From: Phallusia mammillata
Lineage: Eukaryota
Assembly (NCBI GenBank): GCA_965637545.1
Contig: OZ281499.1
Span: 4,464,001 to 4,528,000, forward strand
Direction: 5' to 3'
Length of the DNA stretch: 64,000 bases
Within the stretch, counting starts at the first letter, position 1, and every line of letters starts with the position of its first letter. The translations under genes and the position numbers were made by a program. This document shows, piece after piece, positions 852 through 62,734 of the stretch. The notes beneath the pieces are model-generated. The model did no database searches, was not told where the DNA came from, and saw nothing but the letters and a program-made list of their open reading frames with translations.

Positions 852-2080
852 ATGAGTTTGTCGTTTGAAAACGTGCTTGATTTGATGAACATAACCCTTA
901 AAGTTGGTGATCAAGATTCTGTAAGTCCAAAGAGATTTTCCGATTTTCAAGGAGCTTTTCGGGACGACCTCGAATCAAGAATTCTACACTATGCACAAAA
1001 AGGACAAACGTTTGCTTTTGATCATCTACAGTTTTACAAAATTGAGATTGGTGATTTAAAAGGCAAACAAGTTCTTCGAATGTTGATATCACTCACAAAC
1101 AACGAAGAGTTGATGAAACCTGGAAATTGTTTCGTGTTCCTTGTCAAAACCGAACCAGATACTTCACTGACTGTGCTTCATAAGTATTGTTTCCAAGCAC
1201 GAGGTGTTTCGGCTGAGTCTGGAGAAGAAAGAGGTTTGTTTGCAAGAGCATTTGATGACAAAACATGTTCCAAGCGTCAAAATAATCCCGAGTTTGTCAA
1301 CTACGATTCACAAACGCTTGAAAAATTTCGCTCCACATTATCTGAGCAATATGAAATATACATGAAAGAGAAAATTTTTAATTTGGAACCAAAATATCGT
1401 CGATTTTTTATTGGTGTTGTGTTCGAAATAGCCAAATGCCACGTGAGACATTGGAAAGTTTACAAACATTTAAAAAACTTTCCAACCTCTTCTCTAATCA
1501 AATTAGCACTTGATAATGAATGCAGTGGAAAGTTGCAGGCTGTTTTCAATGATCACAATTTGGATGAGGACATTGAAAATATTAAAAAACAGGCTGCCAA
1601 CAAAAGCTCAAGCCTAGATGAAGTTCACCAATACAAAGCAAATCTTCGTTTGAAGGGAGCTAAAACAATCATTGATCGGTGAGTAAACAGAATACCAACA
1701 GAAGTTTGTTTAAATATCTAGCTTCCATGTACTAAAAGGTAACGTCAATTAGAGTGTTTGTACATCCAGCACTACTGGCATTGTTTAAACAAAAGACTTT
1801 ATTACAAATGTATATGTGTTTACTTGTGATTATCAATTTGAAATAAGCCTTTTACTTTTCAAAAACAAACATTATACAAAAATCAATGAAATTTAGTTTG
1901 CGGTAAGTTCGCTCATGCAACAAACCGACGTAGACTTTAAAAGAAGCGAATATGCATAAACATGTTTAATTAAATTTCATTTTGTTTTGTCTCAGGATTT
2001 TTCCTCCCAATGCTAATGGAAAATATGATGGTGAAAAAGTGAAACAAGCAGCTGATGAGATAAGGAGATTTTATGAATGA
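852..2080 (+). CDS. Array copy 1, intact, tail A; exons 852-1678 + 1996-2080; 303 aa uncharacterised protein
   Basis: ORF 852-1682; donor CG|GTGAGT at 1679, acceptor CTCAG|G at 1995; splicing adds RIFPPNANGKYDGEKVKQAADEIRRFYE*. Confidence 0.9.
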
Positions 2081-2966
2081 AACATCAAATACGAACATTA
2101 TGATCGTTTTTTGTTTCTTTTTGTGTATATTGTAGAATAGAATCCTGTAGATCAGGTAATAGATGTTTACATTGCATTTAACAATGGCAGCTGAATTCTG
2201 TCTCTGTGTGTACAAATTGTAATTAATAAATTGTTCATTTTGTTACCAATGTGATGTATAAAAACATACTTTCTGTACCCAATTTAAGTTTTGCGAAATG
2301 TTTCTAATTGGTAGTGAAAACCTTTAAACGTTGATCAACAAATCATTTTCAGTATCACTAAATACAGCTATGAATATGGTGGTTGTGACCCACGACCATC
2401 AAAACAATACGGTCGCCATTTAAGACAGGACAGTTACGGTATTTGTTTGTGTGCTTAACCTCAGCACTTGTGGAGAAGGAACTCAGAAGGCAATAAATCA
2501 GGCGAATAGATTCGAAAAGTAATTGCAGTACCGAAATTCAAATGGTAGCAGAATGAGGTTGGAAACTTCCTTTTGTCAACATAAGTTGGTGATCAAGATA
2601 AAGTATACCAAACTATGTTGTGTCGATACAAATCGTTTTAATTTAACTGTTACTGCCATTATGCGTGTAGCGCAATTGGACCTGTACTGATCAAAAACAC
2701 TTGTAAGTTATATTCATAAGACCGATACAACCTTTGTTCGATTTTAACTTAAGCAACAGGGAGCACAGAGCCTACCCCTGTATGTTCAGTATTAAGAGGC
2801 AGATATTGGAAACAAGTACTTAAATAGAGTAAAAACATTAAAGTTGGTGATTACGATTTTGTAGATCTACAGAGATTTCCGGATTTTTTCAGAATGTTAT
2901 TCAAACGCCATTTTAATTCGTTCGTGTACCCGACTACAATCAATACACACCGTATCTATTTAATTT

Positions 2967-3180
2967 ATGACACAACGTTATTTGTGTTGGCCTGTGTGCT
3001 TAATCTTAGCACTTGTTGAAAGGGAACTCAATGTCATTTTGGAAAACCATCAGAATCAGTTGAATAAATTTCAAGCGTATACAAAGTACCAAAACTTGGA
3101 TACAGACAGAAACAGTCAGGTTCTCGACATAACTTTTGAAAACGTTTTGATTTGTTGATGATCAAGATTTTGTCTAAACA
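2967..3180 (+). pseudogene. Degenerate 5' relic of the family (sisters 29712-29942, 50054-50299)
   Basis: Matches conserved upstream block and runs into FENVL..(G)DQDF. Confidence 0.6.
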
Positions 3181-3795
3181 ATAGATTCTAGAATTTTCCT
3201 TTTACATTGCGAATGGATCATGGTCTTAAGTTTGCTTATATTTAAAAAAACTAAATTTTACAGCTTAAAACAGGTTCTTAAACATCCCAGCAGAAGATTT
3301 GGATCTGCAGAAATCGCAAATTATTTCAATTTGTCAGCAAACAAACCCGTTGAAGTTTAAATTAAATTACTGTTTTCTAACCAATGACCGATTAGTAGAC
3401 TTCAAAGGTTTTTTATGTAGTTTAGATATTTACCTAGTGTCACGTTGTTATAGCATAATTTGGAAACAAACGAATTAACTGAGGAAAAGGCCTCGAAGGA
3501 TAATATCGCGTGTTTTTGCACCCTGCAAAATACATAGGAGGCTGTAGCTTACGTAGTCTCTTAATTGCAATACAGGGCACTATATTTATGTTGTTCCATT
3601 ACAACGATATTGGCTATAGTGTATGTGAGTTAACGTTCAGCATAAATTGGCTCATACACTTTTATCGCACATGATTTGGATTTGGTTTATGTTTTAAGAT
3701 CGCTTTTATTCGATTACTCAAAGTTGTGGGTTGTCTGTAAAACATGATTGTTTAATTTATAACAGAAAATTACAGAAAAAAATCGAATTAACACC

Positions 3796-4894
3796 ATGAG
3801 TTTGTCGTTCGAAAACGTGCTTGATTTGTTGAACATAACCATTGAAGTTGGTGATCAAGATTCTGTAAATCCAAACAGATTTTCCGATTTTCAAGGATCT
3901 TTTCGAGACGACCTCAAATCAAGAATTCCACACTTTACAAATCAAGGAAACACATTTGCTTTTGATTATCTAGAGTTTTATAAAATTGAGACTGGTGATT
4001 TGAATGGAAAACAAGTTCTTCGAATGTTGATATCACTCACAAACAACGAAGAGTTGATGAAACCTGGAAATTGCTTCGTGTTTCTTGTCAACAACGAACC
4101 AGATATATCACTGACTGTGCTTCTCAATTATTGGATCGAAGCACGGGGTGTTTTGACTGAACTTGAACACGAAAGAGGTTTGTTTGCAAGAGCATTTTGT
4201 GACAAAACATGTTCTTGGCGCCAAAAGAACCCTGAGTTTGTCGGTTACGATTCGCAAACTCTTGAAAACATTCGCTCCACATTATCCGAACAATATGAGA
4301 CACACATGCAAACGAAGATGGTCGATTTAGAGCCAAAATATCGTCGATTGTTTTTTGGAGTTGTATTCGAAATAGCGAAGAGTCATGTGAGGCATTGGAA
4401 AGTTCACAAACATTTAAAACACTTTCCAACCGCTTCTCTTATTAAATTGGCAATTGATAATGGATGTAGTGGAAAGTTGCAGGCCGTTTTTAACGAACAT
4501 GATACCATGAAAAAATTGTTTAAAGAAATCAGTCATAAGCTTAGTGAAGAAGAAAGACTTTCTATCTACCATGCTCGTAAAGATGAACTGCGAAAAGAAG
4601 GAGCAAAGTTAATTATTGACAAGTAAGTTTGCTATGTTCTGTTGGAAAATGTCACCATTAGTGAAATGCTAAGTATGCAAATCGGGGGTGTGGCACACCT
4701 TAACTGCAAAAATGGCTTTAGAATGTACCAGTTCTTATGCTGTTTTTTCGTATACTACTAACATGAGACACATTGTTTTCGCAAACGCAAATTTCTTTTC
4801 TCATTTCAGAATTTTTCCGCCAACTGCTGAAGGAAAGTACGATAAAAGTGAAGTGACGAAAGTTGCAGATGAGATGAAATCATTTTACTTGTGA
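3796..4894 (+). CDS. Array copy 2, intact, tail B; exons 3796-4622 + 4810-4894; 303 aa
   Basis: Donor AA|GTAAGT 4623, acceptor TTTCAG|A 4809; last exon KIFPPTAEGKYDKSEVTKVADEMKSFYL*. Confidence 0.9.
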
Positions 4895-5461
4895 AAACGC
4901 CGAAAATGTCAAGATACCCGAGAACGTATATTGATCTTTTTCGATTCATTTTATTCCTAAACGTGTAAATCTGTAAATAAATAATGTATAGCTGTTGTCA
5001 GTCTATTGGCATCAAGCAAGTTACAATTGTCCAGAATTTCGACGTAAAATCTGTGTTGAGTATTAATCCTAAACTGGAAACATGTTACACAGCAATATTT
5101 AGTTGCAAAGGCAGCAGGAACAGATTTGGCAGCAGGAACAGACTAGTTTCTGCCAAGCGAAACTGAAGTTACTTGTTCGATTTTCACCTCTGTTCCAAAG
5201 GTCACAAAAGATATTATTTACAAAATGACTGGTGTTAACAATACGCCCGTTACGCAATTGATATTTGTTCGAAATCAAACGATACTGACGCTATTTGATA
5301 AGTAAATTGACAGTTGACGTGGTGGTTTGTGCACTTAACCTTAGAAACTGTGGAGAAGGAGCTCATTGTGAAATCGAGGTGTCATTACAAGCAGTTGAAT
5401 AAATTCAAACTTTAGTTCAGTACCAAAATCTGGAAACAGACAAAAAGAGTTAAGTTCGAGA

Positions 5462-6138
5462 ATGAGTTTGTCGTTTCAAAACGTGCTTGATTTGTTAAAC
5501 ATATCAATTGAAGTTGGTGATCAAGATTCTATAGATCCACAAAGATTTTCAGATTTTAAAGAAGCATTTCGAGAATATCTTCAGAAAGAGTTTTGTACTT
5601 TCGAAGCGAGGGAAGAGAGATTTCTTTTGAAAACTTACAATTTTACAATATTGAGATTGCTGATCTGAATGGAAAACAAGTTCTTCGAATGTTGATAACA
5701 CTTACAAACAACGAAGAGTTGATAAAAGATGGAAATTGCTTTGTGTTTCTTACCAACAACGAACCAGAAATTACACTGACTGTGCTTTGCAGATATTGGA
5801 TTGAGCTACGAACCGTTTTCGCTAAGTCTGATCAAGATAAGGGCAGTTGGCTAAGAGCTTTTGATGACAAAACATGTCAGGAGAAGCTGAACAACTCACT
5901 TTACATTGGGTTGGATGACAAAACTATTGAAGAGTTTCGTTTAACTTTGCCTGAGGAATATTCCAAGTACATGGAGCAAAACATGGCCGATTTGGAACCA
6001 AAATATCGTCGATTGTATTTTGGAATTGCATTCGAAATAGCAAAGTGTCACGTGAAACATTGGCTGGTTTACGAACACTTGAAGGACTTTCCCAGGTCGT
6101 CTCTCATTAAGTTAGTGATTGATAACGGATGCAAATAA
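5462..6138 (+). pseudogene. Array copy 3, frameshifted and 3'-deleted
   Basis: Frameshift near 5590 (ORFs 5462-5668 and 5593-6138); breaks at DNGC and joins C-type downstream flank (gcaaataaaacacgcc); tail and last exon absent. Confidence 0.85.
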
Positions 6139-6312
6139 AACACGCCTTTGTACAAATAAAAAACTCAGTGTAAATCTCTGCTAAAGGGAACTAGTTGGAG
6201 AAGTAAATCAGAACTTTTGGATTGAAGCAACAACAAATTGCGAGAAAGATGTAACGTTAAGGATTTAGTGTACATTGTTTGGAATACGAGACGAAATAAA
6301 TCAGAACCACAA

Positions 6313-6379
6313 GGGAATTCCCCTTTAAGGTGAGAAAGGTTCTCTTGCGTTCCGCCGTTCACGCATCGTTGTGACGTCA
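6313..6379 (+). promoter_or_regulatory. kB palindrome + CRE module
   Basis: GGGAATTCCC 6313-6322; TGACGTCA 6372-6379. Confidence 0.55.
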
Positions 6380-6470
6380 CACTTACTGGACGTACTGCTG
6401 TGTGATGAAACCAAGCAACACAAATCCATGTATGGTAGTGTGTCGGTTTGTTGTGCATCACCCTCTACAC

Positions 6471-6790
6471 CAAGGGCGGGCAACCTTTGTTACTGTTGGG
6501 GCAAATATAATAGCCAAAATTATATCGCGGACCGCACCAGTGTATAACAGAAGGTGGTTTTACTTTGTTGCTTACAAAATATGCTTAACTACAAGTAAAC
6601 TTGGAATTTGATTATTGCCACAAATTGCCTGGTCGCAGAAAAATACCATCGGGCGCTTTGTTCTGCTCAAAATATACATTATAGTTGGACTCGTATTCCA
6701 GTACATTTGAAATCCAAGCGTCTCTGCGGGCTGCACAATCTTTAATCAAGGGCCGCATTTTGCCCGCGGGCCGCAGGTTGCCCACCCCTG
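6471..6790. mobile_element. MITE, hAT-like TIRs
   Basis: Ends caagggcgggcaacc / ggttgcccacccctg; TSD not clear; absent from paralogous spacers. Confidence 0.6.
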
Positions 6791-7067
6791 CTGTTAACCC
6801 ACTCAATACCTTAAATTGCCTTTTGAAGTACCATTTGTGGAGTATTTCATTGTGAAGCGTCATTTTTTCATTTAATAGCCCAACCTGTTACCCCACTACA
6901 CACTTAAAGTAAATTACACATTAAATGTCTAAATTTAATGCGAATTGACTGGTTTTCACCCCGTATAGTATGAATATTTAGGCAGACTATCGATTACCGT
7001 GTTTCACTTCACATCGCAATACCTGGTGAATGCACGAACTTTTCATAATAAGCCGTAGTGTTTATGC

Positions 7068-7282
7068 CAGTAGTTCTCAAACTGTGCGTCGCGACGCCCT
7101 GGTGCGTCGTTTCAATTTTCCAAGGGCGTCGCAGAATAGTTCCGTTTTGCGAGTTTTTGTTGTTGTATCAATAAACACAACTTTAATAATAAGTTTCCTC
7201 ATTAAATTTTATTTGCTGGTCTGTCACAAGTCAAGAAAAACTTGTTCAGGGGCGTCGCAACAGAAAAGTTTGTGAACCACTG
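7068..7282. mobile_element. hAT-type MITE
   Basis: TIRs cagtagttctcaaact / agtttgtgaaccactg; 8-bp TSD gtttatgc / gtttgtgc; empty site gtttatgcaat at ~56151. Confidence 0.85.
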
Positions 7283-7642
7283 GTTTGTGCAATTGCAACA
7301 CATGCTAAGCCACCTTTCTAATAAATTCCTTAATCATTACAAAAGTGTGGCAATCGCGTGACATTAGTTATCTGTGCCACTAGTTTCTGCGAAGAGAAAC
7401 TAAAGTTATCACTTGTTTGATTGTCACCTGTGTTACAAAAGTCGTAAAACGGATCATTTTACGCTTGCCCCATGTTGACAATACGCCGCTACGCGATTGG
7501 TATTTGCGCGAAATTGCCGTAGCGGCTGTGGAGAAGTATCTCATTGTGTGTGTTTGGCACAAGCAGAGTCAGTTAAATAAAATCGAACTCTAAGTACAAT
7601 ACCAAAATTTAAGAAAATAGTCAAAACAGTTAAGTTTGCAGA

Positions 7643-8632
7643 ATGAGCTTGTCGTTGGAAAACGTGCTTGATTTGTTGAACATATCAATTGAAGTTGGTG
7701 ATCAAGATTCTGTAAAGCCACAAAGATTTTCAGAATTTGAAGAAACATTTCGAGAGGATCTTAGGAGAAGAATTTCCTACTTACAAAGCAATGGAAGAAC
7801 GTTTTCATTCGAAAATTTACAATTTTACAAATTTAAGATCGGTGATCTGAAAGGAAAACAAGTTCTTCGAATGTTGATATCACTCACAAACAACGAAGAG
7901 TTGATGAAAGATGGAAATTGCTTCGTGTTTCTTGTCAACAACGAACCAGATATTTCACTGATTGTGCTTTACAGATATTGGATTGAACTACGAGGTACTT
8001 TGACTGAAACGGATAAAGAAAAAGGAAATTGGTTTAAAGCTTTTGATGACAAATTATGTCAGAAAAGGCAAAATAATCCACATTTTGTTGGTTTGGATGA
8101 CGAAACTATTAAAAGAGTTTCGTTCCACTTTGCCTGAGGAATATACAAAATATATGGAGCAAAAAATGGCCAATCTGCAACCAAAATATCGTCGATTGTT
8201 TTTTGGAATTGCATTCGAAATAGCAAAGTGTCACGTAAAAAGTTGGCTGGTTTATGAACACTTAAAAGACTTTCCTAGGTCGTCTCTCATTAGGTTGGCA
8301 ATTGATAATGGATGTAGTGGAAAGTTGCAGGCAGTTTTCAACAACCATTTTTTGGATGTTTCTTGCATTCATAAAAAAACTACACATAGAAATGAACAAA
8401 TTACCAAAAATTCAACAACAGAAAGCCGAATGGCGCAGAGAAGGAGCAAAAGAGATTATTGATTGGTGAGTCAAACTTTTATAAATAGCAAAAAAGTAAC
8501 ACCATCAAGAGCCTATAGTTTGTTTAAACTAGTTTTGTTTGTCATAGGATTTTCCCACCAAATGCCGAAGGTAAATACGATGGTGAAGAAGTGAAAAAGG
8601 CTGCTGACAAGATAAAGAGATTTTATAAATAG
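7643..8632 (+). pseudogene. Array copy 4, tail C, two +1 frameshifts in A-runs; last exon 8548-8632
   Basis: Extra A at ~8111-8114 and ~8406-8410; donor TG|GTGAGT 8466 and acceptor CATAG|G 8547 intact. Confidence 0.85.
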
Positions 8633-9792
8633 TTCACGAATTTAAACCAACTGTACCGAATATTCATGGATATCACAAATTATGTCTTTACTGACAAAAT
8701 AACAACTTATCTGTTACTGACTGTATGCGGATAAAATCGACTTACCGCCATTAAAATTTTGACCATTCAAGATAAAAGCGATTAACGCAACAGTTTATTT
8801 CTACTTATAATTGATTTAACATAGAGAATTAGTTAACTTAAAGCGATATATCAAAATACGTATGACAGAATGCGTTTGCATGCGGTTGACTTTTTTTAGA
8901 CGTATTATATATATATTCCAGCTGTGAACTTTCATTCCTTGTTTTGCTGGCCGTCTGTTGGTGACTTTGTTTGTTTTATTATTTGCTCGTTTGCTGACTC
9001 AGTTTAATTGCTGGTTCTGAATTTTCTTGTGCTTGTGTGTTTTGTACGCTCGTGCGTGTGCGTAAATACACAAAAATTGCATTGTAACTACCTATCAAGG
9101 CAAATAAAACACGCCTTTGTGTAAGTTAAAAAGTCTGCGCAAATCTCTGCTGAGGGGGCCAGTTGAAAAAGAAAAGTAGAGGTTTTGGATTGAAGCAACA
9201 ATAAATTAGGACAAAGAAGTGACTCAAAAAAGGCCTCTGTAGTTTTGAACAAAGAACTACGAAAGAAAAAAAATCACGTCAGAACACTGGCTCCCATTTC
9301 AATCAAAAGAAAAAACCCTTCAACAAGAATACGATTTTTATGTGGTTGGGTTTTCACGCATCACTGTCACGTCATGCATACCAGAGTCACTGGTGTATGA
9401 CATCATGTATACCAGTGGCACTTGTAAGATTAACCTCTGTTACACAGGACCCATGCGAATTATTTTCAGCATGACTAATGATAACGATACGCAGCTATAT
9501 AAAAAGTATTTTCGCCCGTCGTTGTTTGAATTTGCATTAAAATGTTTAAACAAAGTTTCATTTTTGTCACAGGATTTTTACTCCCGCTGGAGTTAACCTT
9601 GTATTTGACATTGACTTGATGAATTGTGTCTATGTGTGTACAAATTATAATGTATAAACTGTACAATTGTAATTAATATGATATTTTATAACATATTCTC
9701 TGCACTTAATTTTAGTCGTATGTTGCGTAATATTTTAATTGGTAGTTACAACTTTTCAACGAGGCACAAGGCCCATTCGAACATAACCACAT

Positions 9793-9817
9793 GGGAATTC
9801 CCCCTTGGCGTGAGTAA
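9793..9817 (+). promoter_or_regulatory. kB palindrome + AP-1-like site ~190 bp upstream of copy 5
   Basis: GGGAATTCCC 9793-9802; TGAGTAA 9811-9817. Confidence 0.5.
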
Positions 9818-9988
9818 GGTTTTGTTGTGTATCGTCACGGAATGGTTTGTGCGGTTAACCTTAGCACACAAGCAGAAGTAAATCATTGTGAAAATCTGGA
9901 GCCACTAAAAACAGAATCAGTTGAATAAAATCGAACTCAAAATACAGCACCAAAGTTTAGAATCATACGAAAGAGTTTATCTTAGAGA

Positions 9989-36105: not shown

Positions 36106-36144
36106 TGTATAACAAATTTTCTGGTAAGATTCCTCTGTTACAAG

Positions 36145-51074: not shown

Positions 51075-51252
51075 CATTACAATGATATTCGCTATGTTGT
51101 ATGTGAGTGAACGTTTAGCATAACTTGGCTTAAACACTTTTATCGCAGATGATTTGCATCTAGTTTATGTTCATAAGATCGTTTTTAACCGATTGCTTGA
51201 GGTTGTTGGTTGTCTGTAAAATATTACAAACAGAAAAAAACGAATTAACACA

Positions 51253-52246: not shown

Positions 52247-53633
52247 GATTTCAAACACTGTGTAAAAAATTTTCCTGTTTAAGATTACGCTGCACTTAAA
52301 TTCGTTTTGTATTTCCGCTTTATAGGTAATGAATAATCTTGTAATTATGTAATTTTAGAAATGTTGGTGATGAATTTGCATGTGAATGTGTGTATAAAAG
52401 ACATTTCGTTACATTTGTATTGTAGATAAATGTAATGCTTCTGTGGAAAATAAAGCATATTTTAGTTGATTAAAATGACTATATTAAGGACAAAAACAAA
52501 ACAGGCAATTCTTGAGGAATCCAAAAAGTTAAAACCGAAAACGTTGCAGCAGTTTCAGATCAAATACTTTCACAAATATTATCTCATGTCGAGAATTACT
52601 CTTAACTTCACATAAAAGGGAATTCCCCACAAGTGTAAATAAAGTTTTCATGTGGTGTGCTTGTCACGCTCTGTTATGGCGTCACACACAACAAAGTCAC
52701 TGATGTGTATCGACACCATGCGATACTTAATCAGTTTGTGTTTTAAATTCAAAACAAACTTATTTCAATAACTTAGACCGTAAGTGTGTTTTCCATAATG
52801 TTTTCGGGTAAGTAATTAGCTTTATAGAATAGATCAGTGCTACTCAAACTGTGGAACACGTACCGGCAGAAATTAGTCCATGTTTTTCCGTCATAAGAGT
52901 TTACCATCCCACGCTGAAGAAAAAAATACAAATGGTGAAAATATTTTCCTTCATAAAAGTTTACCATCCCACGCTGAGGAAAAATACAATGGTGAAAGAA
53001 TTTGCCTGGTATTTAGGAGTTTAAAATGCCTTTCCTTCACTTTTATCTTCCAAGTTATGTATTTTGAAATGTTTCAGGGCACAAGCTAAATGTGTTTTGG
53101 GGTACACAAAAATATTAAAGCAAATGTAGATCAACGTATTCGATTTAAACATCAGCTACTGCATCTCTATTTAAATTTAATTACACGCTTATGTACAACA
53201 TCATACCTCTCATATTTGTCATGACGTCGCACTATACACATGGTTCCGTCTTTTTCCGCATCGTATTTGTGGAAATGTCAAGCATTAAAAATGAGTGACA
53301 ATTTACAGCTGAAAAATTGTTGATTGGAAAAGTTTAGTGTTGCAAATATGATAATAATGCACGGTTAGGTTCCTACGAATAGCGAGATATGATCGAAATT
53401 TGCAACGCGGTTTCCGTTTGAAAGGAAATTGGTGGGCATAGCATGCAAATGTTACACCACACATAAACAGTTCGTTTTTACTATTAGATCTTGAAAAAAA
53501 CGGTAAATAGTCTTTCAGTCGGTAAAAGTAGGGTATTTGCAACGATATAACACGAACTACTTAGAACCACTTTTAAACTTTTTTACGGGCAGGAGTATAC
53601 ACACTTACAGTTACCGCAATATCAGCATAAATA

Positions 53634-53785
53634 TTGGTGATCAAGATTCTGTAGGTTAACCAGGTTTAATAGATTGTCACGAGACATTTCAAGACGATCC
53701 AGAGAAAATTTGCACATTTTCAAATCAAAGAAGAAGGTTTTTTGCAATTGTCCAATATTACTAAATTAAGATCGGTACTCTTAAC
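53634..53785 (+). pseudogene. Highly decayed 5' exon fragment
   Basis: ggtgatcaagattctgtag...gagacatttcaagacgat...caatattactaaattaagatcggt aligns by eye to roughly codons 18-70 of the family. Confidence 0.55.
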
Positions 53786-54047
53786 AAAAATAGCTTTTAC
53801 CAGCTTAAGTAAGCTGAAATCTGTCAGCAATACAAACACACTGTTTTGTAAAGTAGTTGGCTTTTCAATCCAACCCAGGATTGTCGCGTTTTGGGACATT
53901 GATTAACCTACCAAATGTAACTTGAAGTTTATAGTCAAAATAGTTCATTATTTGACAGCCTTAAATCACACCAAACGTTTAAGTTTAGGGTAAGTGAAAT
54001 CCAAAATTTGTAGACATTACCTAATCAAACCACACTGACACGTAAAA

Positions 54048-55352
54048 ATGAGTTTATCATTTGAAGAAGTCCTTGACCTGCTAAGCATCACTGTTGAAGT
54101 AGACGACAACGATTTTCCGAAAATTCAGGAGATGCCCAACTTTGAGGGACAATTTAGGCAGTTTCTGGAAGGAAAACTACAGCACTACCTAAAAAAAGGA
54201 AAAGTGACACAACTTTTCAATTTTGAATATTACAAAATTGAAATTGGCGAGTTAAACGGAAAACAAATTCTTCGAATGTTGATATCACTAACAAACAACG
54301 AGGAGTTGATGAAAGACGGAAATTGTTTCGTGTGCTGTGTAAACGATGTCGGAGAAAATTCAGTTATTGTATTCTCAAAATATTGCATTGAATCAAGAGG
54401 TGCCGTTGCAGAGAACGAAGAAGAGCGAGGAAACTGGTCTAAGGCATTTGATGAAAAAGCATGCATCCTACAACGCAGAAATCCAAGATATCTTGGTTTA
54501 GACAAACAAACAATCAAACAGTTTTGTTCAACTTTATCAAAGCAATACAACAGCTTTTTGTCAACAAAAATGGCGGATTTGCAACCACAATATCGTCGGT
54601 TGTTTTTCGGAGTTGTGTTCGAAATTGCAAAGTGCTATATCAGACATTGGGATGCTTACAAACATTTAAAAACCTTTCCAACTGCTTCTCTTATCAAGTT
54701 GGCAATTGATAATGGATGTAGTGGAAAGTTGCAGGCTGTTTTTAACGAACATGATATCATGAAAGATTTGTTTAAAGAAATCAGCAAACAGCTTAGTGAA
54801 GAAGAAAGACTTTCTGTCTACCATGCTCGTAAAGATGAACTACGAAAAGAAGGAGCAAAGTTAATTATTGACAAGTAAGTTTGTTACCTTCTGTTGCAAA
54901 AAGTCACAATTAGTAAAATGCTAACTCTGCAAATCGGCTGTAACAGCATAAAGGTAACTGACACACACGTTAGGTTAAAAAATGACGTTAGAATGTAGCA
55001 TTTTTTACATGAGACATATTGAGATTAGAGGCCCAATCATTTGTTATCGCGCGGTGTTTTCGTTGCGTTGTGACGTGCTTGCGGTTCCTTCCTTTTCCCT
55101 TTTTTTATCGTGCACTGTACTAGTCGCATTCAGTGTTATTTACCCTGATGAATACGACCTGTATAGGACGTCGAAACGTCGGAATAAAATTACATTTGCC
55201 AGAAGAGCTCTACAAACTTGATGAGACATATTGTTTTCGCAAACGAACATTTCCTTTCTCGTTTCAGAATTTTCCCACCAACTGCTGAAGGAAAGTACGA
55301 TAAAAGTAAAGTAACAAAAGTTGCTGATGAGATGAAATCATTTTACTTGTGA
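54048..55352 (+). CDS. Array copy 21, intact, most divergent head, tail B; exons 54048-54874 + 55268-55352; 303 aa
   Basis: Donor 54875, acceptor TTTCAG 55267; intron carries the hammerhead-bearing insertion. Confidence 0.88.
55022..55220 (+). mobile_element. 199-bp Penelope-like / retrozyme-like non-autonomous insertion with 13-bp TSD
   Basis: Flanked by atgagacatattg at 55009-55021 and 55221-55233; empty site present once in paralogous B introns (e.g. ~4765-4777); contains hammerhead core. Confidence 0.8.
55136..55187 (+). ncRNA. Minimal type I hammerhead ribozyme motif
   Basis: CTGATGA 55145-55151, stem II acg-a-cct/gtat/agg-a-cgt, GAAA 55173-55176, ACGT palindrome with GUC site ending 55180, stem I ttatt(ta)cc / ggaataa. 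Confidence 0.75.
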
Positions 55353-55720
55353 AAACAAGATGCCCAAGAACGTATATTGATGTTTTTCGATTAATTCTGT
55401 TCCTAAATGTGTAAATCTGTAAATAAATAATGTATAGCAATTGTCAGTCTATTGGGGGAAGCAAGTTACAATTGTCCGGAATTTCGACGTAACATCTGTG
55501 CTGAGTATTAATCCTAACCCGAGAACATGTTACGCAATGTTTACTTGCATAGGCAGCAAAACCAAACGATTTTCCCCTCCAAAGGTTTTATTGCATCAAA
55601 AATGATATAGTCTTAAAGATGGTATGCAACCATGCGAGAAAGTAGTTGAAACAATTCATAAACTTCATGCATTTAGCGTACATTGTGTGGAATACGAGAC
55701 GAAATAAATCAGAGCCGCAA

Positions 55721-55787
55721 GGGAATTCCCCCTTAATGTGAGAAAGGTTTCTTTGTGTTTCTTTGTTCAAGCATCGATGTGACGTCA
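55721..55787 (+). promoter_or_regulatory. kB + CRE module (sisters 57896-57962, 62424-62490)
   Basis: GGGAATTCCC 55721-55730; TGACGTCA 55780-55787. Confidence 0.55.
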
Positions 55788-56375
55788 CACTTACAGGACG
55801 CACTACCGTATGGCGAAACCAAGCGACACAAAACCAATGCATGGTTTTGATTGATGTTGGGTTGTGTGTCGAATGTTGTGCATTACCTACCACCTACACA
55901 CCCACCCTTTACCCCCCAGGCTATCTAAATTTTAAAGGAATCGTACAATTTATAGACTAAGCCACTACAAAGCGTCACTTACTGAGTTTCATCTTGTAGC
56001 CCTACCTGTTTACCCGCTAACATTCTAAAGTAGAATAAGCATTTAATAATGTATGATTTTATTGAGATTTGCACCCCTTATAGCTTGTTTATTTAAGCAG
56101 AATATTAATTCTGCTAAATAGCCGTGTTTCACTTTATAATAAGCCATACAGTTTATGCAATAGCAGCATATGCTAAGCCACCTTTCTATTTTTTGAAACC
56201 ATTACGCAAGTGTGGTGATCGTGTTACAAAGATGCTACCTGTACCACCAGTTTCTGTCAAGCGAAACTGAAGTTACTTTTATAATTGTCTTTTATGATTA
56301 AAAGCAGTTGAATAAATTCTACCTTTAAGTACAGTACCAAAATTTGAAAACAGGCAAAAAGAGTTAAGTTCGAGA

Positions 56376-57492
56376 ATGAGTTTGTCGTTTCAAAACGTGC
56401 TTGATTTGTTAAACATAACAATTGAAGTTTGTGATCAAGATTCTATAGATCAACAAAGATTTTCAGATTTTAACGGAGCATTTCGAGAATATCTTAAGGA
56501 AAAAGTTTTGTACTTTCAAAACGAGGGAAGAAAGATTTCTTTTGAAAATTTACAATATTACAAAATTGAGATTGCTGATCTGAATGGAAAACAAGTTCTT
56601 CGAATGTTGATATCACTTTTAAACAACAAAGAGTTGATAAAAGATGAAAATTGCTTCGTGTTTCTTACCAACAACGAACCAGATACTGCAATGACTGTGC
56701 TTTGCAGATATTGGATTGAGCTACGAGGCACTTTGACTGAAACGGATAAAGAAAAAGGAAATTGGTTTAAAGCTTTTGATGACAAATTATGTCAGAAAAG
56801 GCAAAATAACCCACGTTATATTGGCTTGGATGACAAAACTATTAAAAAGCTTCGTTCCACTTTGCCAGAGGAATATATAAAATACATGGAGCAAAACATG
56901 GCCGATCTGCAACCGAAATATCGTCGATTGTTTTTTGGAATTGTATTCGAAATAGCAAAGTGTCACGTGAAAAATTGGCTGGTCTACGAACACTTAAAGG
57001 ACTTTCCTAGGTCGTCTCTAATTAAATTAGCGATTGATAATGGATGTAGTGGAAAGTTGCAGGCCGTGTTTAACGACCATGATATCATAAAAGGTTTGTT
57101 TAAAGAAATCAGTCAACAGCTTAGTGAAAAAGAAAGACTTTCTGTCTACCATGCTCGTAAAGATGAACTACGAAAACAAGGAGCAAAGTTAATTATTGAC
57201 AAGTAAGTTTGCTACCTTCTGTTGGAAAATGTCACCATTAGTAAAATGCTAGCAATGCAAATCGGGTGCAACGGCATAAAGGTAACTGGCGCACACGTTA
57301 AGTGCAAAAATGGCTTTAAAACGTACCTTTTTTTCATTGTTTTTTTAATATATTACCAACGTGAGACATATAGTTTTCGCCAAAGCAAATTCCCTTTCTC
57401 GTTTCAGAATTTTCCCACCAACTGCTGAAGGAAAGTACGATAAAAGTGAAATAACGAAAGTTGCTGATCAGATGAGATCATTTTACTTGTAA
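56376..57492 (+). CDS. Array copy 22, intact, tail B; exons 56376-57202 + 57408-57492; 303 aa
   Basis: Donor 57203, acceptor 57407. Confidence 0.9.
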
Positions 57493-58522
57493 AAACTTTT
57501 GCAGAAAATGTCAAGAAGCCCGAGAACGTATATTGATCTTGTACGATTCATTTTGTTCTTAAATGAGGAAATCTGTAAATAATAAATGTATAGCAATTGT
57601 CAGTCTATTGGCGTCAAGCAAGTTACAATTGTCCAGAATTTCGACATAAAATCTGTGTTGAGTATTAATCCTAAACCGAAGAGATGTTACACAATATTTA
57701 GTTACAAAAACAGCAAAACCAAATTTGATGAACGTTAGCTTACGATTTTACCCTTTAATGATTTTATGGCATCAAAAAACATATAGTCCTAAAATGATAT
57801 GCAACCATGTGAGAAAGTAATTCAAACAATGTATAAACGGTGAGCATTTCGCGTACATCGTGTTGAGTACGAGACGAAACGAACCAGAACAGCAAGGGAA
57901 TTCCCCCTTAACGTGAGAAAGGTTTTCTTGCGTTTTGTCGTTCACGCTTGGATGTGACGTCACACTTACCGGACGCACTGCTGTGTGGCGACACCAAGCG
58001 ACACAAACGTTTTTCACCCCGTACAGTATGAATATTTAAGCAGAATATACATCACCGTATTTCACTTTACATCACAATATCTTCAGTGAATGTACAATTT
58101 GTTTCACGATAGTCCGCTGTGTATGTACAATAGCAATTTATGCTAAGCCACATTGCTAGTTATTTTGGAAATCATTGTGGCGATCGCATGGCATAAGTTT
58201 AAATCTACCTGTGCCATTAGTTTCTGCCAAGAGAAACTGAAGTTACTTGTTTGATTTTCACCTCTGTTCCAAAGGTCATTTACAAAATGACTGGTGTTAA
58301 CAATACGCCGTTACGCAATTGATATTTGTTCGAAATCAAAACGTGCAAACGATATTTGATACGTGAAAAGTAAGTTACGGTGTTGGTTTGTGTGCTCAAC
58401 CTTAGAAACTGTGGAGAAGGAACACATTGTGAAAGTGAGGTGTCATTCCAAGCAATTGAAAAAATTCAAACTTTATTACAGTACCAAAATCTGGAAACAG
58501 ACAAAAAGAGTTAAGTTCGAGA

Positions 58523-59511
58523 ATGAGTTTGTCGTTTCAAAACGTGCTTGATTTGTTAAACATAACAATTGAAGTTTGTGATCAAGATTTTATAGACCCA
58601 CAAAGATTTTCAGATTTTAAAGGAGCATTTCGAGAATATCTTCAGGGAAGAGTTTTATACTTTCGAAGCGAGGGAAGAGAGATTTCTTTTGAAAAATTAC
58701 AATTTTACAAACTTGAGATTGGTGATCTTAATGGAAAACAAGTTCTTCGAAGGTTGATAACACTTACAAACAACGAAGAGTTGATAAAAGATGGAAATTG
58801 ATTTGTGTTTCTTACCAACAACGAACCAGAAATTGCCCTGACTGTGCTTTGCAGATATTGGATTGAGCTACGAACCGTTTTGGCTAAGTCCGATCCAGAT
58901 AAGGGCAGTTGGCCAAGAGCTTTTGATGACAAAACATGCCAGGAGAAGCTGAACGACTTACGTTATATTGGGTTGGATGACAAAACTATTAAAGAGTTTC
59001 GTTCAACTTTGCCTGAGGAATATTCAAAATACATGGAGCAAAACATGGCCGATTTGCAACCAAAATATCGTCGATTGTTTTTTGGAATTGCATTCGAAAT
59101 AGCAAAGTGTCACGTGAAACATTGGCTGGTTTACGAACACTTGAAGGACTTTCCCAGGTCGTCTCTCATTAAGTTAGCGATTGATAACGGATGCAGTGGA
59201 AAGTTGCAGGCGGTGTTTAACCACCATTTTTTACATGTTTCTTTTATTCGTAAAACAACTACCGATAGACAGGAACAAATTACTAAAATTCAACAACAGA
59301 AAGCCGAATGGCGCAGAGAAGGAGCAAAAGAGATTATTGTTTGGTAAGTCAATCTTTTATACACAGCAAAATAGAAAATTAACCCCAATAGTTGATTATT
59401 TCTGTAACTAGTTTTGTCTGCCATAGGATTTTTCCACCCAATGCTGAAGGAAAATACGATGGTGAAGAAGTAAAAAAGGCTGCTGACAAGATAAAGAGAT
59501 TTTACGAATAG
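58523..59511 (+). pseudogene. Array copy 23, tail C, nonsense TGC>TGA at 58799-58801; last exon 59427-59511
   Basis: ORFs 58523-58801 and 58805-59347 in the same frame; splice sites intact. Confidence 0.8.
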
Positions 59512-60203
59512 ACCACGAGTTTAAACCAATATGAGTTGAACTGTAGCGAAAAGACATGAGCATCGTGTATGTAACTAGCGAAAAAAACAACACTTAAACA
59601 CAAAATTAAAAACACAAATTTTTAGATATTCAAGGCCAAAGCGATTTACCATCAAAATGTGTGTGACAGAATCCGTTTGTGCGTTTGATCTTTGCAATGA
59701 CCCGTGTATTTCAGCTGTAAACTTTCACTCCTCTTTCCAGCCTTTCTTCGTTTGCTGACCATTAGTTCGCCACTTTGTTTATTTCATTTTTTGCCCTCTT
59801 TGTTGAATAAGTTTAATTACTGGTTCTAATTAGTCTTGTAGTTGTGTGTATGTACGTCCGTACGTGTGAGAAAATAAACAGAACTTGCATTGTAAATAGG
59901 CTTGTCGTTCAGGGCAAATAAAACACGCCTTTGTATAAATAAAACGTCAGTGTAAATCTCTGCTAAAGGGAACCAGTTGGAAAAGGAAAGTAGAACTTTT
60001 TGATTGAAGCAACAATAAATTACGACAAACATGTAAAGAACGAAAAAAACTTCGCGTCAGAACACTGGCTTCCATTTTAACCAAAGGAAAAACAAACCTT
60101 CAGTAAGAGTAAGATTTTTATGTGGTTGGGTTGTCACGCACGATTGTGACGTCATGCACACCAGTGTGACTGGTGTATGACGTCATGTATAACATATTTT
60201 CAG

Positions 60204-60643
60204 TAGTGATGGGACGAAACCAGGTTTTGAAGCGCGTACCGATACCGAGTACGAATACCACATGTATATACCTTCGATACCGAGTACTTAAGTACAGTGT
60301 TGTACTTAGTTGTATATCACTGGCTAGTTTATCTGCCATGACCGGGGTACAGGCATGTACACACACATGCAGAAAAATGTAATTTCCATAATTCTCCATC
60401 CATACGATTGCAAAAGAAAGTCGGTAACCTGGCGGAACTTTTCCCGATTTTGTGTTGTCCGAGGCAAATATTGGCATAAAGTTGCCCGTATTCTTATGAT
60501 GTAAATCGGCCTTAGGTACTCACACGTTGGTATCAAAAACTGAAACAAAATATTTCGATACCGAGTACGAGTATCGATACCACTAAAATCGTTCGATACC
60601 GTCGATACCGAGTACCGAGTACCGGGTACCCGTCCCATCACTA
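60204..60643. mobile_element. Second copy of the same MITE at the homologous site
   Basis: TIRs tagtgatgggacg / cgtcccatcacta; same right flank gttacaag, left TSD deleted; copied with the segment. Confidence 0.85.
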
Positions 60644-60923
60644 GTTACAAGGGTCACAAATGCGATCATTTTCAGCATGACTGATGTTAACAGTGCGCAG
60701 CTGTATGCTTGGCATTTGTCCCTGACGATAACAAAAAACGACGTTGACGCTACGTGATGCGTGACGCGACAGTTTCGGTGTTGTTTTGTGCGCTTGAACC
60801 TTGGCACCTCTGGATATGGAACTCATTATAAATGTGAGGTATCATAAAAAATCACTTAAATAAATTCGAACTTTAAAGACAGTACAAACATTTGGAAACG
60901 GAGAAGAGAGTTAAGATTGCAGA

Positions 60924-62037
60924 ATGAGTTTGTCGTTTGAAAACGTGCTTGATTTATTAAACATAACCATTAAAGTTGGTGATCAAGATTCTGTCAGTCC
61001 ACAAAGATTTTCAGATTTTAAAGGAACATTTCGAGACCATCTTGAAAGAAGAATGTCGTACTTTCAAAGTCAGGGACGTACGTTTTCATTTGAAAACTTA
61101 CAATATTACAAAATTGGGATTGGTGATTTGAATGGAAAACAACTTTTTCGAATGTTGATATCACTCACAAACAACGAAGAGTTGATGAAACCTGGAAACT
61201 GCTTCGTGTTTCTTGTCAACAACGAACCAGATACTTCACTGACTGTGTTTCACAGTTATTGGTTTGAACCACGAGCTACTTCTGGATCGGATAATGATAG
61301 AGGAAATTGGACTCGAGCCTTTGATGACAAAACACGACAGGAGAGGCAGAAATATCCTTTTTCCTTTGGATATGACAACCAGGCCATCAAAGAGTTTCGC
61401 TCCACATTATCTGAGCAATATGTGAATTATATGAAGCAAAAAATTGCCAATATAAAACCAAAATATCGCCGGTTGTTTTTCGGAGTTGTGTTTGAAATTG
61501 CAAAGTGTCATGTGAGGTATTGGGAAGTTTACAAACATTTGAAAAACTTTCCAACGGCTTCCCTTATCAAATTGGCAATTGATAATGGATGTAGTGGAAA
61601 GTTGCAGGCCGTGTTTAACGACCATGATATCATAAAAGGTTTGTTTAAAGAAATCAGTCAACAGCTTAGTGAAAAAGAAAGACTTTCTGTCTACCATGCT
61701 CGTAAAGATGAACTACGAAAACAAGGAGCAAAGTTAATTATTGACAAGTAAGTTTGCTACCTTCTGTTGGAAAATGTCACCATTAGTAAAATGCTAGCAA
61801 TGCAAATCGGGTGCAACGGCATAAAGGTAACTGGCGCACACGTTAAGTGCAAAAATGGCTTTAAAACGTACCTTTTTTTCATTGTTTTTTTTATATATTA
61901 CCAACGTGAGACATATAGTTTTCGCAAAAGCAAATTCCCTTTCTCATTTCAGAATTTTCCCACCAACTGCTGAAGGAAAGTACGATAAAAGTGAAGTAAG
62001 GAAAGTTGCTGATCAGATGAGATCATTTTACGTGTAA
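60924..62037 (+). CDS. Array copy 24, intact, tail B; exons 60924-61747 + 61953-62037; 302 aa
   Basis: Donor 61748, acceptor 61952. Confidence 0.9.
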
Positions 62038-62734
62038 AAACTTTTGCAGAAAATGTCAAGAAGCCCGAGAACGTATATTGATCTTGTACGATTCATTTTG
62101 TTCTTAAATGAGGAAATCTGTAAATAAATAATGTATAGCAATTGTCAGTCTATTGGCGTCAAGCAAGTTACAATTGTCCAGAATTTCGACATAAAATCTG
62201 TGTTGAGTATTAATCCTAAACCGAAGAGATGTTACACAATATTTAGTTACAAAAACAGCCAAACCAAATTTGATGAACGTTAAGTTACGATTTTACCCTT
62301 TAATGATTTTATGGCATCAAAAAACATATAGTCCTAAAATGATATGCAACCATGTGAGAAAGTAATTCAAACAATTTATAAACGGTGAGCATTTCGCCAG
62401 TACGAGACGAACCAGAACATCAAGGGAATTCCCCCTTAACGTGAGAAAGGTTTTCTTGCGTTTTGTCGTTCACGCTTGGATGTGACGTCACACTTACCGG
62501 ACGCACTGCTGTGTGGCGACACCAAGCGACACAAACGTTTTTCACCCCATATAGTATGAATATTTAAGCAGAATATACATCACCGTATTTCACTTTACAT
62601 CACAATATCTTCAGTGAATGTACAATTTGTTTCACGATAGTCCGCTGTGTATGTACAATAGCAACTTATGCTAAGCCACATCGCTAGTTATTTTGGAAAT
62701 CATTGTGGCGATCGCATGGCATAAGTTTAAATCT

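What the first reader, a model, noticed from the sequence alone, without database searches (positions are those of the whole stretch)
1550..62734. The duplication unit is phase-shifted: tail of gene n + spacer + head of gene n+1
Seen: the 5' type of each copy is predicted by the tail before it. After B tails the next start is gttcgagaATG..SFQNV (copies 3, 8, 14, 22, 23). After long A spacers it is ttxacacxATG (2, 13, 20). After short A spacers it is ttcttgagaATG (10, 15). After the D/D' spacers of copies 6, 8 and 16 it is the MSSxF head (7, 9, 17). After C spacers it is cattcaaagttgc..ATG (6, 11) or agattgcagaATG (stub 36821, copy 24). Inference: unequal crossovers resolve within coding sequence, so each expansion or contraction creates a new chimeric gene while promoters travel with heads.
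Basis: partly seen in the sequence, partly recalled or inferred. Interest (0 to 1): 0.7.

Follow-up and report, generated by a model that had tools for sequence, protein, structure and literature searches.

The report
Mosaic tandem gene array, sea squirt
A sea-squirt-type genome carries a row of about 60 copies of an unstudied two-exon gene whose front and rear parts have been reshuffled by recombination, often inside the coding sequence; the proposed fixed copying unit (tail + spacer + next head) holds for only part of the array, and the process is a well-known one.

Summary
The window lies inside a 172-kb, same-strand array: 51 full-length copies plus fragments of a two-exon gene. Exon 1 is 827 nt, the intron 62-620 nt, and exon 2 encodes 27 aa. 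The only relatives found are uncharacterised ascidian proteins.

Tail types A, B, C and D lead to 2, 1, 3 and 4 head types respectively. The rule "B tail, then SFQNV head" holds 5/5 in the window and about 3 of 10 times outside it.

Across the array, each unit falls into two linkage blocks:
- about 200 nt upstream plus exon 1 nt 1-600;
- exon 1 nt 691-827 plus intron, exon 2 and about 500 nt of 3' flank.

The break between them is sharp and sits in the conserved DNGCSG-coding stretch. The tail block is linked to the next head (z -5.0) but more strongly to its own head (z -8.4). Only inside the window does the next-head link match or exceed the own-head link.

Ends of high-identity diagonals are enriched in exon 1 within the window (1.65-1.7x) and roughly proportional to length array-wide. 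Some duplicated blocks start and end inside exon 1. Others are gene-phased.

Verdict: chimeric genes made by recombination inside the coding sequence are real. A fixed phase-shifted unit is not. This is a known mechanism in a new family.

The scan also noted this same array earlier (s1-368982).

The parts
852..63443 (+). Window part of the tandem array: 23 full-length exon-1 copies, truncated copy 3 (5462-6133), 5'-truncated copy 25 (62732-63229) and short head stubs. The whole array spans about G000:C6:4402299-4573625.
   Evidence: tblastn and nhmmer maps; whole-genome search
27592..28418 (+). Exon 1 of copy 12, used as the example of an intact gene model: 827 nt, 275 codons plus 2 nt. The apparent stop codon is part of the GTGAGT splice donor.
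   Evidence: GTAAGT/GTGAGT donor kept in 50 of 51 copies; dN/dS about 0.3
28419..28731 (+). Intron of copy 12 (313 nt). Intron sequence and length are specific to the tail type: A about 313 nt, B about 200 or 400, C about 82, D about 85.
28732..28816 (+). Exon 2 of copy 12. It follows an AG acceptor, completes the split codon and encodes 27 further residues (IFPPNAEGKYDGEKV...FYE) before the stop. Its variants go with the tail type.
   Evidence: the only block conserved across all spacer types
28192..28281 (+). Conserved stretch of exon 1, nt 601-690 (FP..SLIKLAIDNGCSGKLQAVFN). It is the boundary between the 5' and 3' linkage blocks and the zone where retained breakpoints are enriched.
   Evidence: mean pairwise distance 0.19; Mantel block boundary; two-fold excess of mosaic switches
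10611..12119 (+). Phase-shifted shared block: tail of copy 5, spacer and head of copy 6. It is 95% identical to 23410-24862 (copies 10 and 11) and runs from exon-1 nt 623 to exon-1 nt 102. The bodies on either side differ.
   Evidence: identity profiles
57033..59232 (+). Phase-shifted shared block of about one repeat period. It runs from exon-1 nt 658 of copy 22 to nt 710 of copy 23 and is 96.9% identical to 61578-63119 (copies 24 and 25).
34552..40511 (+). 5.9-kb three-gene block, from exon-1 nt 166 of copy 15 to exon-1 nt 595 of copy 17. It is 93.4% identical to a block 69 kb upstream in the array (window coordinates -34897 to -28370). Both ends lie inside exon 1.
5905..10687 (+). 4.8-kb block from exon-1 nt 445 (truncated copy 3) to exon-1 nt 699 (copy 5). 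It is 95.4% identical to window coordinates -22953 to -17327.
258..3156 (+). Counter-example, a gene-phased block: copy 1 with 594 nt upstream and about 1.1 kb past exon 2. It is 92% identical to 47253-50243 (copy 19). Both ends are intergenic.
36821..36884 (+). Head stub: exon-1 nt 1-64 joined to DNA that lies about 390 nt upstream of SFQNV-type genes. This is a non-homologous junction, and it is older than the 5.9-kb block duplication because the paralogous block carries it too.
53634..53785 (+). Head stub (exon-1 nt 53-210) about 260 nt upstream of the divergent copy 21. The same kind of stub precedes this gene type at the eight other places where a stub of this kind was mapped. Further stubs lie at 2836-2888, 11679-11735, 14326-14413, 24439-24497 and 49923-49972.

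Best explanation
This is an old birth-and-death tandem array of a protein-coding, ascidian-specific orphan gene. Its copies have been repeatedly rearranged by homologous recombination between misaligned paralogues (unequal crossover, long-tract gene conversion, or both), together with some non-homologous deletions.

The junctions have no fixed phase.
- Many fall inside exon 1, which holds the longest runs of perfect identity between diverged units.
- Retained junctions are concentrated at nt ~600-700, the DNGCSG-coding stretch. This is also where the predicted fold passes from the main domain to the C-terminal helices.
- About as many junctions fall in intergenic DNA.

The result is two modules.
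- 5' module: about 200-400 nt upstream plus exon 1 nt 1-600.
- 3' module: exon 1 nt 691-827, the type-specific intron, exon 2 and about 500 nt of 3' flank.

The modules are shuffled against each other at both joints. A 'tail + spacer + next head' family such as B then SFQNV is one of several junction families that were later copied. It is not the general unit of duplication.

Shown: the gene model from sequence, the mosaicism, the linkage blocks and the distribution of breakpoints. Inferred: the recombination mechanism, and the idea that chimeras are kept more often when the junction sits at a domain boundary.
For: Gene model and coding status:
- The donor is kept in 50/51 copies and exon 2 is conserved.
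- 37/51 exon-1 ORFs are open and 32/51 full models are intact. dN/dS is 0.28-0.32 in the body, 0.17-0.20 around DNGCSG and 0.5 in the tail.

Linkage:
- The Mantel map shows two linkage blocks with the break at nt 601-690.
- On the nt 1-600 tree, tail types need 15 changes (minimum 3, shuffled mean 26.9). Linkage is real but has been broken at least 12 times.

Breakpoints:
- Pairwise identity profiles show sharp switches.
- The mosaic parse gives 37 switches at cost 8 and 76 at cost 5. Of these, 10.0 and 18.3 fall in nt 601-700, against 4.5 and 9.2 expected.
- Strict-score chains include blocks with both ends in exon 1 and blocks with both ends intergenic.
- Density of chain ends: exon 1 1.29x and intergenic 0.79x array-wide; exon 1 1.65-1.73x and intergenic 0.49-0.70x in the window.
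- B-type 3' modules are collinear for about 400-750 nt past exon 1 and then join different distal spacers and heads.

Recombination substrate and other points:
- The longest exact match between two units lies in exon 1 in 80% of 1275 pairs, with modes at nt 201-250 and 651-700.
- Adjacent copies are no more alike than random pairs (0.264 against 0.264), so neighbours are not being homogenised.
- Mosaic copies are intact as often as non-mosaic ones (19/27 against 13/24).
- In the AlphaFold2 model, confidence drops at residues 231-260, just after the joint.
Against: - The intron, exon 2 and the correctness of the assembly therefore rest on sequence logic alone.
- Ends of high-identity chains partly reflect uneven constraint along exon 1 rather than recombination. 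Starts near nt 181 and ends near nt 330-350 bracket the conserved nt 201-300 stretch.
- Chain ends and mosaic switches are not independent events, because breakpoints are inherited by later duplicates.
- The longest identity runs are at nt 201-250, yet retained switches are not enriched there. Homology alone therefore does not explain the nt 600-700 hotspot, and the retention argument offered for it is only inference.
- Only one block (nt 658 to 710, copies 22/23 and 24/25) has the equal-phase ends expected of a single unequal crossover, and its two copies are not adjacent.
Confidence: 0.72

Rival explanations
1. The array grows and shrinks in units of 'tail of gene n + spacer + head of gene n+1', because unequal crossovers essentially always resolve within exon 1. 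The preceding tail would then predict the head better than the gene's own tail does.
For: - Within the window, the nearest-neighbour link head(n+1) to tail(n) has z=-4.8, against -2.4 for the own gene.
- Within the window, tail to next upstream region has z=3.0, against -0.4 for the own gene.
- 52-57% of diagonal ends fall in the 33% of the window that is exon 1 or stub.
- The five B then SFQNV junctions are collinear over the whole spacer.
- Blocks 10611-12119 and 57033-59232 have exactly this shape.
Against: - Array-wide, the own-gene link is stronger: z -8.4 against -5.0, and 13 against 18 changes on the body tree.
- The Mantel correlation of tail(n) with head(n+1) is about 0 (-9 to +13 x0.01).
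- 'B then SFQNV' fails at about 7 of 10 junctions outside the window.
- Tail-sharing chains reach the own ATG in 29% of pairs and the next ATG in 8%. Head-sharing chains reach the own tail in 41% and the previous tail in 10%.
- Gene-phased duplications exist.
- The head is linked to the body up to nt 600. The 'head' is therefore not a short separate piece.
Confidence: 0.12
2. Duplications are whole-gene and gene-phased. The chimeras arise afterwards, purely by non-reciprocal gene conversion that overwrites the 3' cassette (tail, intron, exon 2) or other tracts. No crossover junction lies in coding DNA.
For: - Several large recent blocks have intergenic ends.
- Phase-shifted blocks have unequal start and end phases (nt 623 to 102, 166 to 595, 445 to 699), which a single unequal crossover does not produce.
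- The two copies of the nt 658-710 block are separated by a full period rather than adjacent.
Against: - Tracts of 1.4-5.9 kb that span unalignable spacers and whole genes are long for conversion.
- The data cannot separate conversion from crossover followed by further events. Either way the junctions lie in exon 1 and chimeric genes result.
Confidence: 0.25
3. The mosaic pattern is an artefact. Either a repetitive array was misassembled, or constraint varies along the exon and mimics breakpoints.
For: - No reads could be laid on the region.
- Some chain ends bracket conserved stretches.
Against: - Copies differ by 3-40%, far above long-read error, so chimeric joins are unlikely.
- Non-coding introns and 3' flanks co-vary with tail type.
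- Switches go from 98% to about 35% identity, or from about 75% to 100%, within tens of nucleotides.
- Junctions such as the 36821 stub recur in paralogous blocks at about 93% identity, so they were inherited.
Confidence: 0.05

Closest known systems
[quoted passage not shown]
   Same: - Recombination between misaligned tandem paralogues resolves inside the gene.
- The 5' part, with its upstream regulatory DNA, of one paralogue becomes joined to the 3' part of another.
- Chimeras can be retained as working genes.
   Different: - Here there are about 60 copies rather than two to a few.
- Many successive events are superimposed.
- Four deep 3'-cassette types combine with about 13 body types.
- No expression or population data exist, and the gene function is unknown.
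Tandem gene arrays with region-dependent phylogenies, as surveyed in Trypanosoma brucei (PMC1855330)
   Same: Different regions of the repeat unit give inconsistent phylogenetic affinities among duplicates. This is attributed to recombination or conversion within the arrays.
   Different: - The trypanosome arrays evolve largely in concert (homogenised).
- In this array, neighbours are as different as random pairs and copies are old (median dS about 0.7). That is birth-and-death evolution with shuffling, not concerted evolution.
Plant NLR/R-gene and vertebrate KIR/MHC-type clusters, where unequal crossover and conversion create chimeric paralogues (from my own knowledge, not checked here)
   Same: - Large, fast-turnover tandem families.
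- Intragenic breakpoints.
- A mixture of intact genes and pseudogenes.
- Modular reassortment of domains.
   Different: - No evidence here for a recognition or immune role.
- dN/dS is below 1 everywhere measured.
- The protein has no signal peptide-like N-terminus and no known domain.
Uncharacterised ascidian proteins: Ciona intestinalis XP_002129972.3 and XP_009860047.1, Clavelina lepadiformis CAK8695974.1
   Same: - Detectable homology over the whole of exon 1 (profile E-values 1e-36 to 1e-11, about 20-28% identity).
- Similar length, about 280-320 aa.
   Different: - These are distant relatives.
- No close homologue was found in the 5.8-billion-protein word search.
- I did not examine whether those species also have arrays.

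Membership tests
Tandem array remodelled by unequal crossover / gene conversion (Lepore-type chimeras) | Same-orientation tandem paralogues with enough homology to misalign | tested here: met
   51 full copies on one strand with a period of about 2-3 kb. The longest exact match between two units has a median of 34 nt and lies in exon 1 in 80% of pairs.
Tandem array remodelled by unequal crossover / gene conversion (Lepore-type chimeras) | Chimeric genes: the 5' and 3' parts of one gene have different closest relatives, with sharp switch points | tested here: met
   Identity profiles, the mosaic parse, 15 tail-type changes on the body tree and the Mantel block structure.
Tandem array remodelled by unequal crossover / gene conversion (Lepore-type chimeras) | Crossover signature: a duplicated segment one or more periods long, with the same phase at both ends, and the two copies adjacent | tested here: inconclusive
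   One candidate has near-equal phase (nt 658 to 710, 57033-59232 and 61578-63119), but its copies are separated by a period. The other blocks have unequal phases.
Tandem array remodelled by unequal crossover / gene conversion (Lepore-type chimeras) | Copy-number polymorphism, or reciprocal products, in populations | not testable with these tools
   Array-wide, the own-gene link has z -8.4 and the next-gene link -5.0. Changes on the body tree are 13 against 18. It is met only within the window on some measures.
   Window: exon 1 1.65-1.73x, intergenic 0.49-0.70x. Whole array: 1.29x against 0.79x for chains of 400 nt or more, and 0.91x against 0.90x for chains of 800 nt or more. Part of the excess reflects constraint rather than recombination.
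Concerted evolution (homogenised array) | Neighbouring copies are more alike than distant ones, with low within-array divergence | tested here: not met
   Adjacent copies differ by 0.264, the same as all pairs (0.264). The Mantel correlation with physical distance is r=0.10 for the body and -0.03 for the tail. Median dS is about 0.7.
Ascidian orphan protein family (Ciona LOC100175694-like) | Sequence homology to the named ascidian proteins, and no known domain | tested here: met
   The profile search found 34 hits, the named ones all ascidian and 'uncharacterized'. There is no Pfam family. There is no PDB or ESM Atlas fold match for a confident model with pLDDT 88.

The most novel reading that the evidence does not exclude
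The conserved DNGCSG-coding stretch may be more than a passive patch of homology. It could be a selected joint that lets four C-terminal cassettes (tail helices, their own intron, exon 2 and 3' flank) be recombined with about 13 body types. That would give an orphan ascidian protein family with an unmatched predicted fold a combinatorial repertoire. One hint: the longest identity runs lie at nt 201-250, yet retained switches are enriched at nt 600-700 instead.
Probability: 0.12. Interest if true: 0.6.

Novelty: new member of a known kind. Interest (0 to 1): 0.3.

Why it matters
The array is a clean, large example of how a tandem gene family diversifies by reassorting a 5' module (upstream DNA plus main domain) with a 3' module (C-terminal helices, intron, last exon, 3' flank). 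About 60 copies are laid out in one contig.

It also corrects an appealing but over-general rule drawn from a single window. The phase of duplication is not fixed, and extending the analysis by 108 kb reverses the apparent balance of linkage.

The biology of the family itself is open: it is ascidian-specific, under purifying selection, and has a confident predicted fold with no structural match. The recombination mechanism is textbook.

Tried and rejected
- Pfam on the protein and on spacer ORFs: nothing.
- Word-based protein search: nothing.
- Foldseek against PDB, VIA-align wide and the ESM Atlas on a confident model: no convincing match. The best was Z 4.5, on the C-terminal helices only.
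- Rfam at gathering thresholds over the window: no match.
- TRF: no rows, because the period exceeds its limit.
- Mantel tests on fixed-offset 100-nt windows lose register more than about 300 nt from an anchor because of indels. I therefore did not rely on them for the distal spacer and used chained BLAST HSPs instead.
- Categorical leave-one-out prediction was uninformative, with 13 head classes and small N.
- I tried to reconstruct the copy 22-25 region as a single unequal crossover. The order of the products does not fit, so I leave crossover versus conversion open.
- A metagenomic contig carrying a distant relative (P0001) showed a single copy, not an array, and added nothing.
- Local homogenisation of neighbours (concerted evolution) was tested and rejected.
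- The exon 1 + exon 2 joined protein was not built or searched. All protein work used exon 1 alone, by reference.

Full report
WHAT IS THERE

The window is G000:C6:4464001-4528000, in a 240-Mb assembly. Earlier notes of this scan call the organism a sea squirt. My own search agrees: the only named relatives of the encoded protein are uncharacterised proteins of Ciona intestinalis and Clavelina lepadiformis.

tblastn and an nhmmer profile find 23 full-length plus-strand copies in the window. They also find a copy truncated at exon-1 nt 673 (5462-6133), a 5'-truncated copy (62732-63229) and several short head stubs. I fetched the flanks. The whole array spans about 172 kb, with 51 full-length copies plus fragments. 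More distant paralogue clusters lie elsewhere on C6 and on C1.

GENE MODEL (from sequence only)

- The 276-codon ORF does not really end at a stop. The TGA/TAA overlaps a GTGAGT/GTAAGT splice donor that is kept in 50 of 51 copies.
- The only block conserved in all spacer types lies 62-620 nt downstream. It follows a pyrimidine-rich tract and an AG, completes the split codon and encodes 27 more residues before a stop.
- The gene is therefore exon 1 (827 nt), intron, exon 2 (85 nt), giving about 303 aa.
- 37 of 51 exon-1 ORFs are open and 32 of 51 full models are intact.
- dN/dS is about 0.3 in codons 1-200, about 0.2 around DNGCSG, and 0.5 in the tail among same-type tails. These are real coding genes of some age: median dS in the body is about 0.7.
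- There is no Pfam domain.
- An AlphaFold2 model of the exon-1 protein is confident (pLDDT 88, pTM 0.86) but has no convincing match in PDB or the ESM Atlas.

The last ~45 codons of exon 1 fall into four deep types, each with its own intron (unalignable between types) and its own exon-2 variant.
- A: NLDEDIENIKK.
- B: DIMKDLFKEIS.
- C: HFLHVSF...QQKAEWRREG.
- D: NLDISS.

- B tails (copies 2, 7, 13, 21, 22) are followed by gttcgagaATG/SFQNV heads.
- A tails are followed by two head types, depending on spacer length.
- The D tails of copies 6, 8 and 16 are followed by MSSxF heads.
- C tails are followed by caaagttgc heads or agattgcaga heads.

The five B then SFQNV junctions are collinear through the whole spacer at about 80-89% identity, so this is a real junction family.

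The rules nevertheless cover only 17 of 24 junctions. D tails are followed by four head types and C tails by three. The rules also need tails to be subdivided by spacer, and the 3' end of a spacer is the next head's upstream region.

IS THE PRECEDING TAIL THE BETTER PREDICTOR?

I measured pairwise distances in 100-nt segments along the unit for all 51 copies and correlated the distance matrices.

Within one gene there are two blocks.
- About 200 nt upstream plus exon 1 nt 1-600: r 0.45-0.82 among the exon segments, 0.26-0.46 with the first 200 nt upstream.
- Exon 1 nt 691-827, intron, exon 2 and about 500 nt downstream: r 0.6-0.84 in the core, 0.3-0.46 with the flank.
- Between the blocks r is 0.14-0.35. 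The conserved nt 601-690 segment is the boundary.

Across genes, tail(n) against upstream/head(n+1) gives r of -0.09 to +0.13.

Tests that focus on close relatives give a positive but weaker cross-gene link.
- Nearest-neighbour test, all copies: own gene z=-8.4, next gene z=-5.0.
- Parsimony changes of tail type on the nt 1-600 tree: 13 for the own tail and 18 for the preceding tail, with about 23.5 when shuffled.
- On a -200..+200 head tree: 16 and 15.

Within the window alone the next-gene link is as strong or stronger.
- Nearest-neighbour z: -4.8 against -2.4.
- Mutual information with the upstream 100 nt: z=3.0 against -0.4.

Outside the window the balance reverses, and 'B then SFQNV' holds for about 3 of 10 junctions. 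B-type 3' modules stay collinear for roughly 400-750 nt past exon 1 and then join at least three or four different distal spacers and heads.

WHERE ARE THE BREAKPOINTS?

I ran a self-comparison with a strict score (+1/-4), so that HSPs stop where identity falls below about 80%. I chained HSPs across indels and mapped the chain ends onto the gene model.

Large blocks with both ends in exon 1 exist.
- 34552-40511, matching a block 69 kb upstream: nt 166 to nt 595 three genes later, 5.9 kb, 93%.
- 5905-10687: nt 445 to nt 699.
- 10611-12119 matching 23410-24862: nt 623 to nt 102.
- 57033-59232 matching 61578-63119: nt 658 to nt 710.

Gene-phased blocks exist too.
- A 5.7-kb, 97%-identical two-gene block just right of the window, running from -120 of an ATG to 230 nt past an exon 2.
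- 258-3156 matching 47253-50243.

Densities of unique chain ends:

| Set | Exon 1 | Intergenic |
|---|---|---|
| Window | 1.65-1.73x | 0.49-0.70x |
| Array, chains of 400 nt or more | 1.29x | 0.79x |
| Array, chains of 800 nt or more | 0.91x | 0.90x |

Array-wide, however, there is no strong preference for exon 1. Part of the exon excess comes from uneven constraint, because ends bracket the conserved stretches.

Chains that share a tail reach nt 600 in 73% of pairs, nt 500 in 49%, the own ATG in 29%, exon 2 in 47% and the next ATG in 8%. Chains that share a head reach the own tail in 41% and the previous tail in 10%.

MOSAIC GENES

Identity profiles show sharp switches.
- Copies 22 and 24 are 58-92% identical up to nt 660 and 100% from nt 661 on.
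- Array copy 13 and window copy 22 are 97-98% identical to nt 600 and about 35% in the tail.
- Copies 12 and 19 are 73-83% identical to nt 180 and 92-100% afterwards.

A minimum-cost mosaic parse of exon 1 finds 37 switches in 27 copies at a switch cost of 8 mismatches, and 76 switches in 34 copies at cost 5. The parse accepts a switch only if it saves more mismatches than the cost, and spreads each breakpoint over its interval of ambiguity. Switches are spread over nt 150-700 with a two-fold excess at nt 601-700.

Mosaic copies are intact as often as others (19/27 against 13/24).

WHY THERE?

For 80% of unit pairs, the longest uninterrupted identity lies in exon 1, with modes at nt 201-250 and nt 651-700. 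Exon 1 is therefore the best substrate for homologous recombination between diverged units.

The strongest identity patch (nt 201-250) is not the richest in retained switches. This suggests that retention also matters. Residue ~232 is where the model passes from the main body into two C-terminal helices of lower confidence, so chimeras joined there may keep both modules whole. That step is inference.

Neighbours are not homogenised, so this is birth-and-death evolution with shuffling, not concerted evolution.

Head stubs in the spacers, and the non-homologous junction of the 36821 stub (which recurs in the paralogous block), show that illegitimate deletions have also contributed.

COMPARISON WITH WHAT IS KNOWN

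Chimeric genes formed by unequal crossover or interparalogue conversion, in which one paralogue's promoter and 5' part become joined to another's 3' part, are classic in the beta-globin cluster (PMC4041002). Region-dependent phylogenies within tandem arrays have been described in T. brucei (PMC1855330). I found no paper naming the Ciona relative.

The finding is a new, large example of a known process in an unstudied family.

VERDICT

It is true as listed, incomplete in the window, and not general across the array.
Intragenic recombination and chimeric genes are real, and upstream DNA does travel with heads. A fixed phase-shifted duplication unit is not supported. Crossover versus conversion remains unresolved.

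Nothing in this work called for a referred step.

Noticed in passing
window 2836-2888, 11679-11735, 14326-14413, 24439-24497, 36821-36884, 49923-49972, 53634-53785: Short fossil fragments of the 5' end of exon 1 (model nt 1-64, 8-66, 15-103, 45-97, 53-210) sit inside the spacers at fixed distances upstream of particular gene types. A ~200-nt stub precedes the divergent 'MSLSFEEV' type at nine places in the array. Spacers therefore contain decayed gene heads.
   Followed up: partly
window 18626-18743 (copy 8) and 12837-12839 (copy 6): Copy 8 has lost the splice donor through a small deletion, so its ORF reads on to 313 aa. In copy 6 the split codon is TA+G, so a stop forms at the exon junction and the exon-2 residues would be missing.
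   Followed up: no
window copies 4, 5, 10, 15, 23 (7643, 9989, 22781, 34387, 58523): All five C-tail copies in the window have a broken exon 1. Array-wide, 6 of 11 C-tail copies are broken, against 3 of 19 B-tail copies.
   Followed up: partly
1-2 nt before the ATG of most copies, e.g. window 845-851, 27585-27591: Most copies have ...ttgcagA or ...cgagA directly before the ATG. This looks like a 3' splice acceptor, possibly for SL trans-splicing or a 5'-UTR intron as is common in ascidians. Copies 2, 13 and 20 lack it. A similar AAGTTGCAG occurs in the KLQ codons at the body/tail joint. Not testable without RNA.
   Followed up: no
window 40742-45125: An unusually long spacer (4.4 kb) between copies 17 and 18. 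It begins with a G+C-rich stretch and has raised GC and reversed GC skew. Its ORFs have no Pfam match. Probably an insertion of unknown kind.
   Followed up: partly
Rfam at gathering thresholds gave no match anywhere in the window. A minimal motif could fall below those thresholds, and I did not test further.
   Followed up: partly
G000:C1:9442559-9477702 (minus strand), G000:C6:1477775-1547606, C6:4100098-4100928, C6:26410951-26411777: Further members of the family lie outside the array: a cluster at 35-42% identity on C1, a cluster of about 17 hits at 22-26% identity on C6, and two isolated copies at 49% and 65%.
   Followed up: no
exon-1 protein, e.g. window 27592-28419: The AlphaFold2 model is confident (pLDDT 88, pTM 0.86), with an alpha/beta core and helical C-terminal part. 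No PDB match passes Foldseek E 0.001 or VIA Z 5, and no ESM Atlas match passes TM 0.5 over the model. It is possibly an undescribed fold, but single domains were not searched separately.
   Followed up: partly
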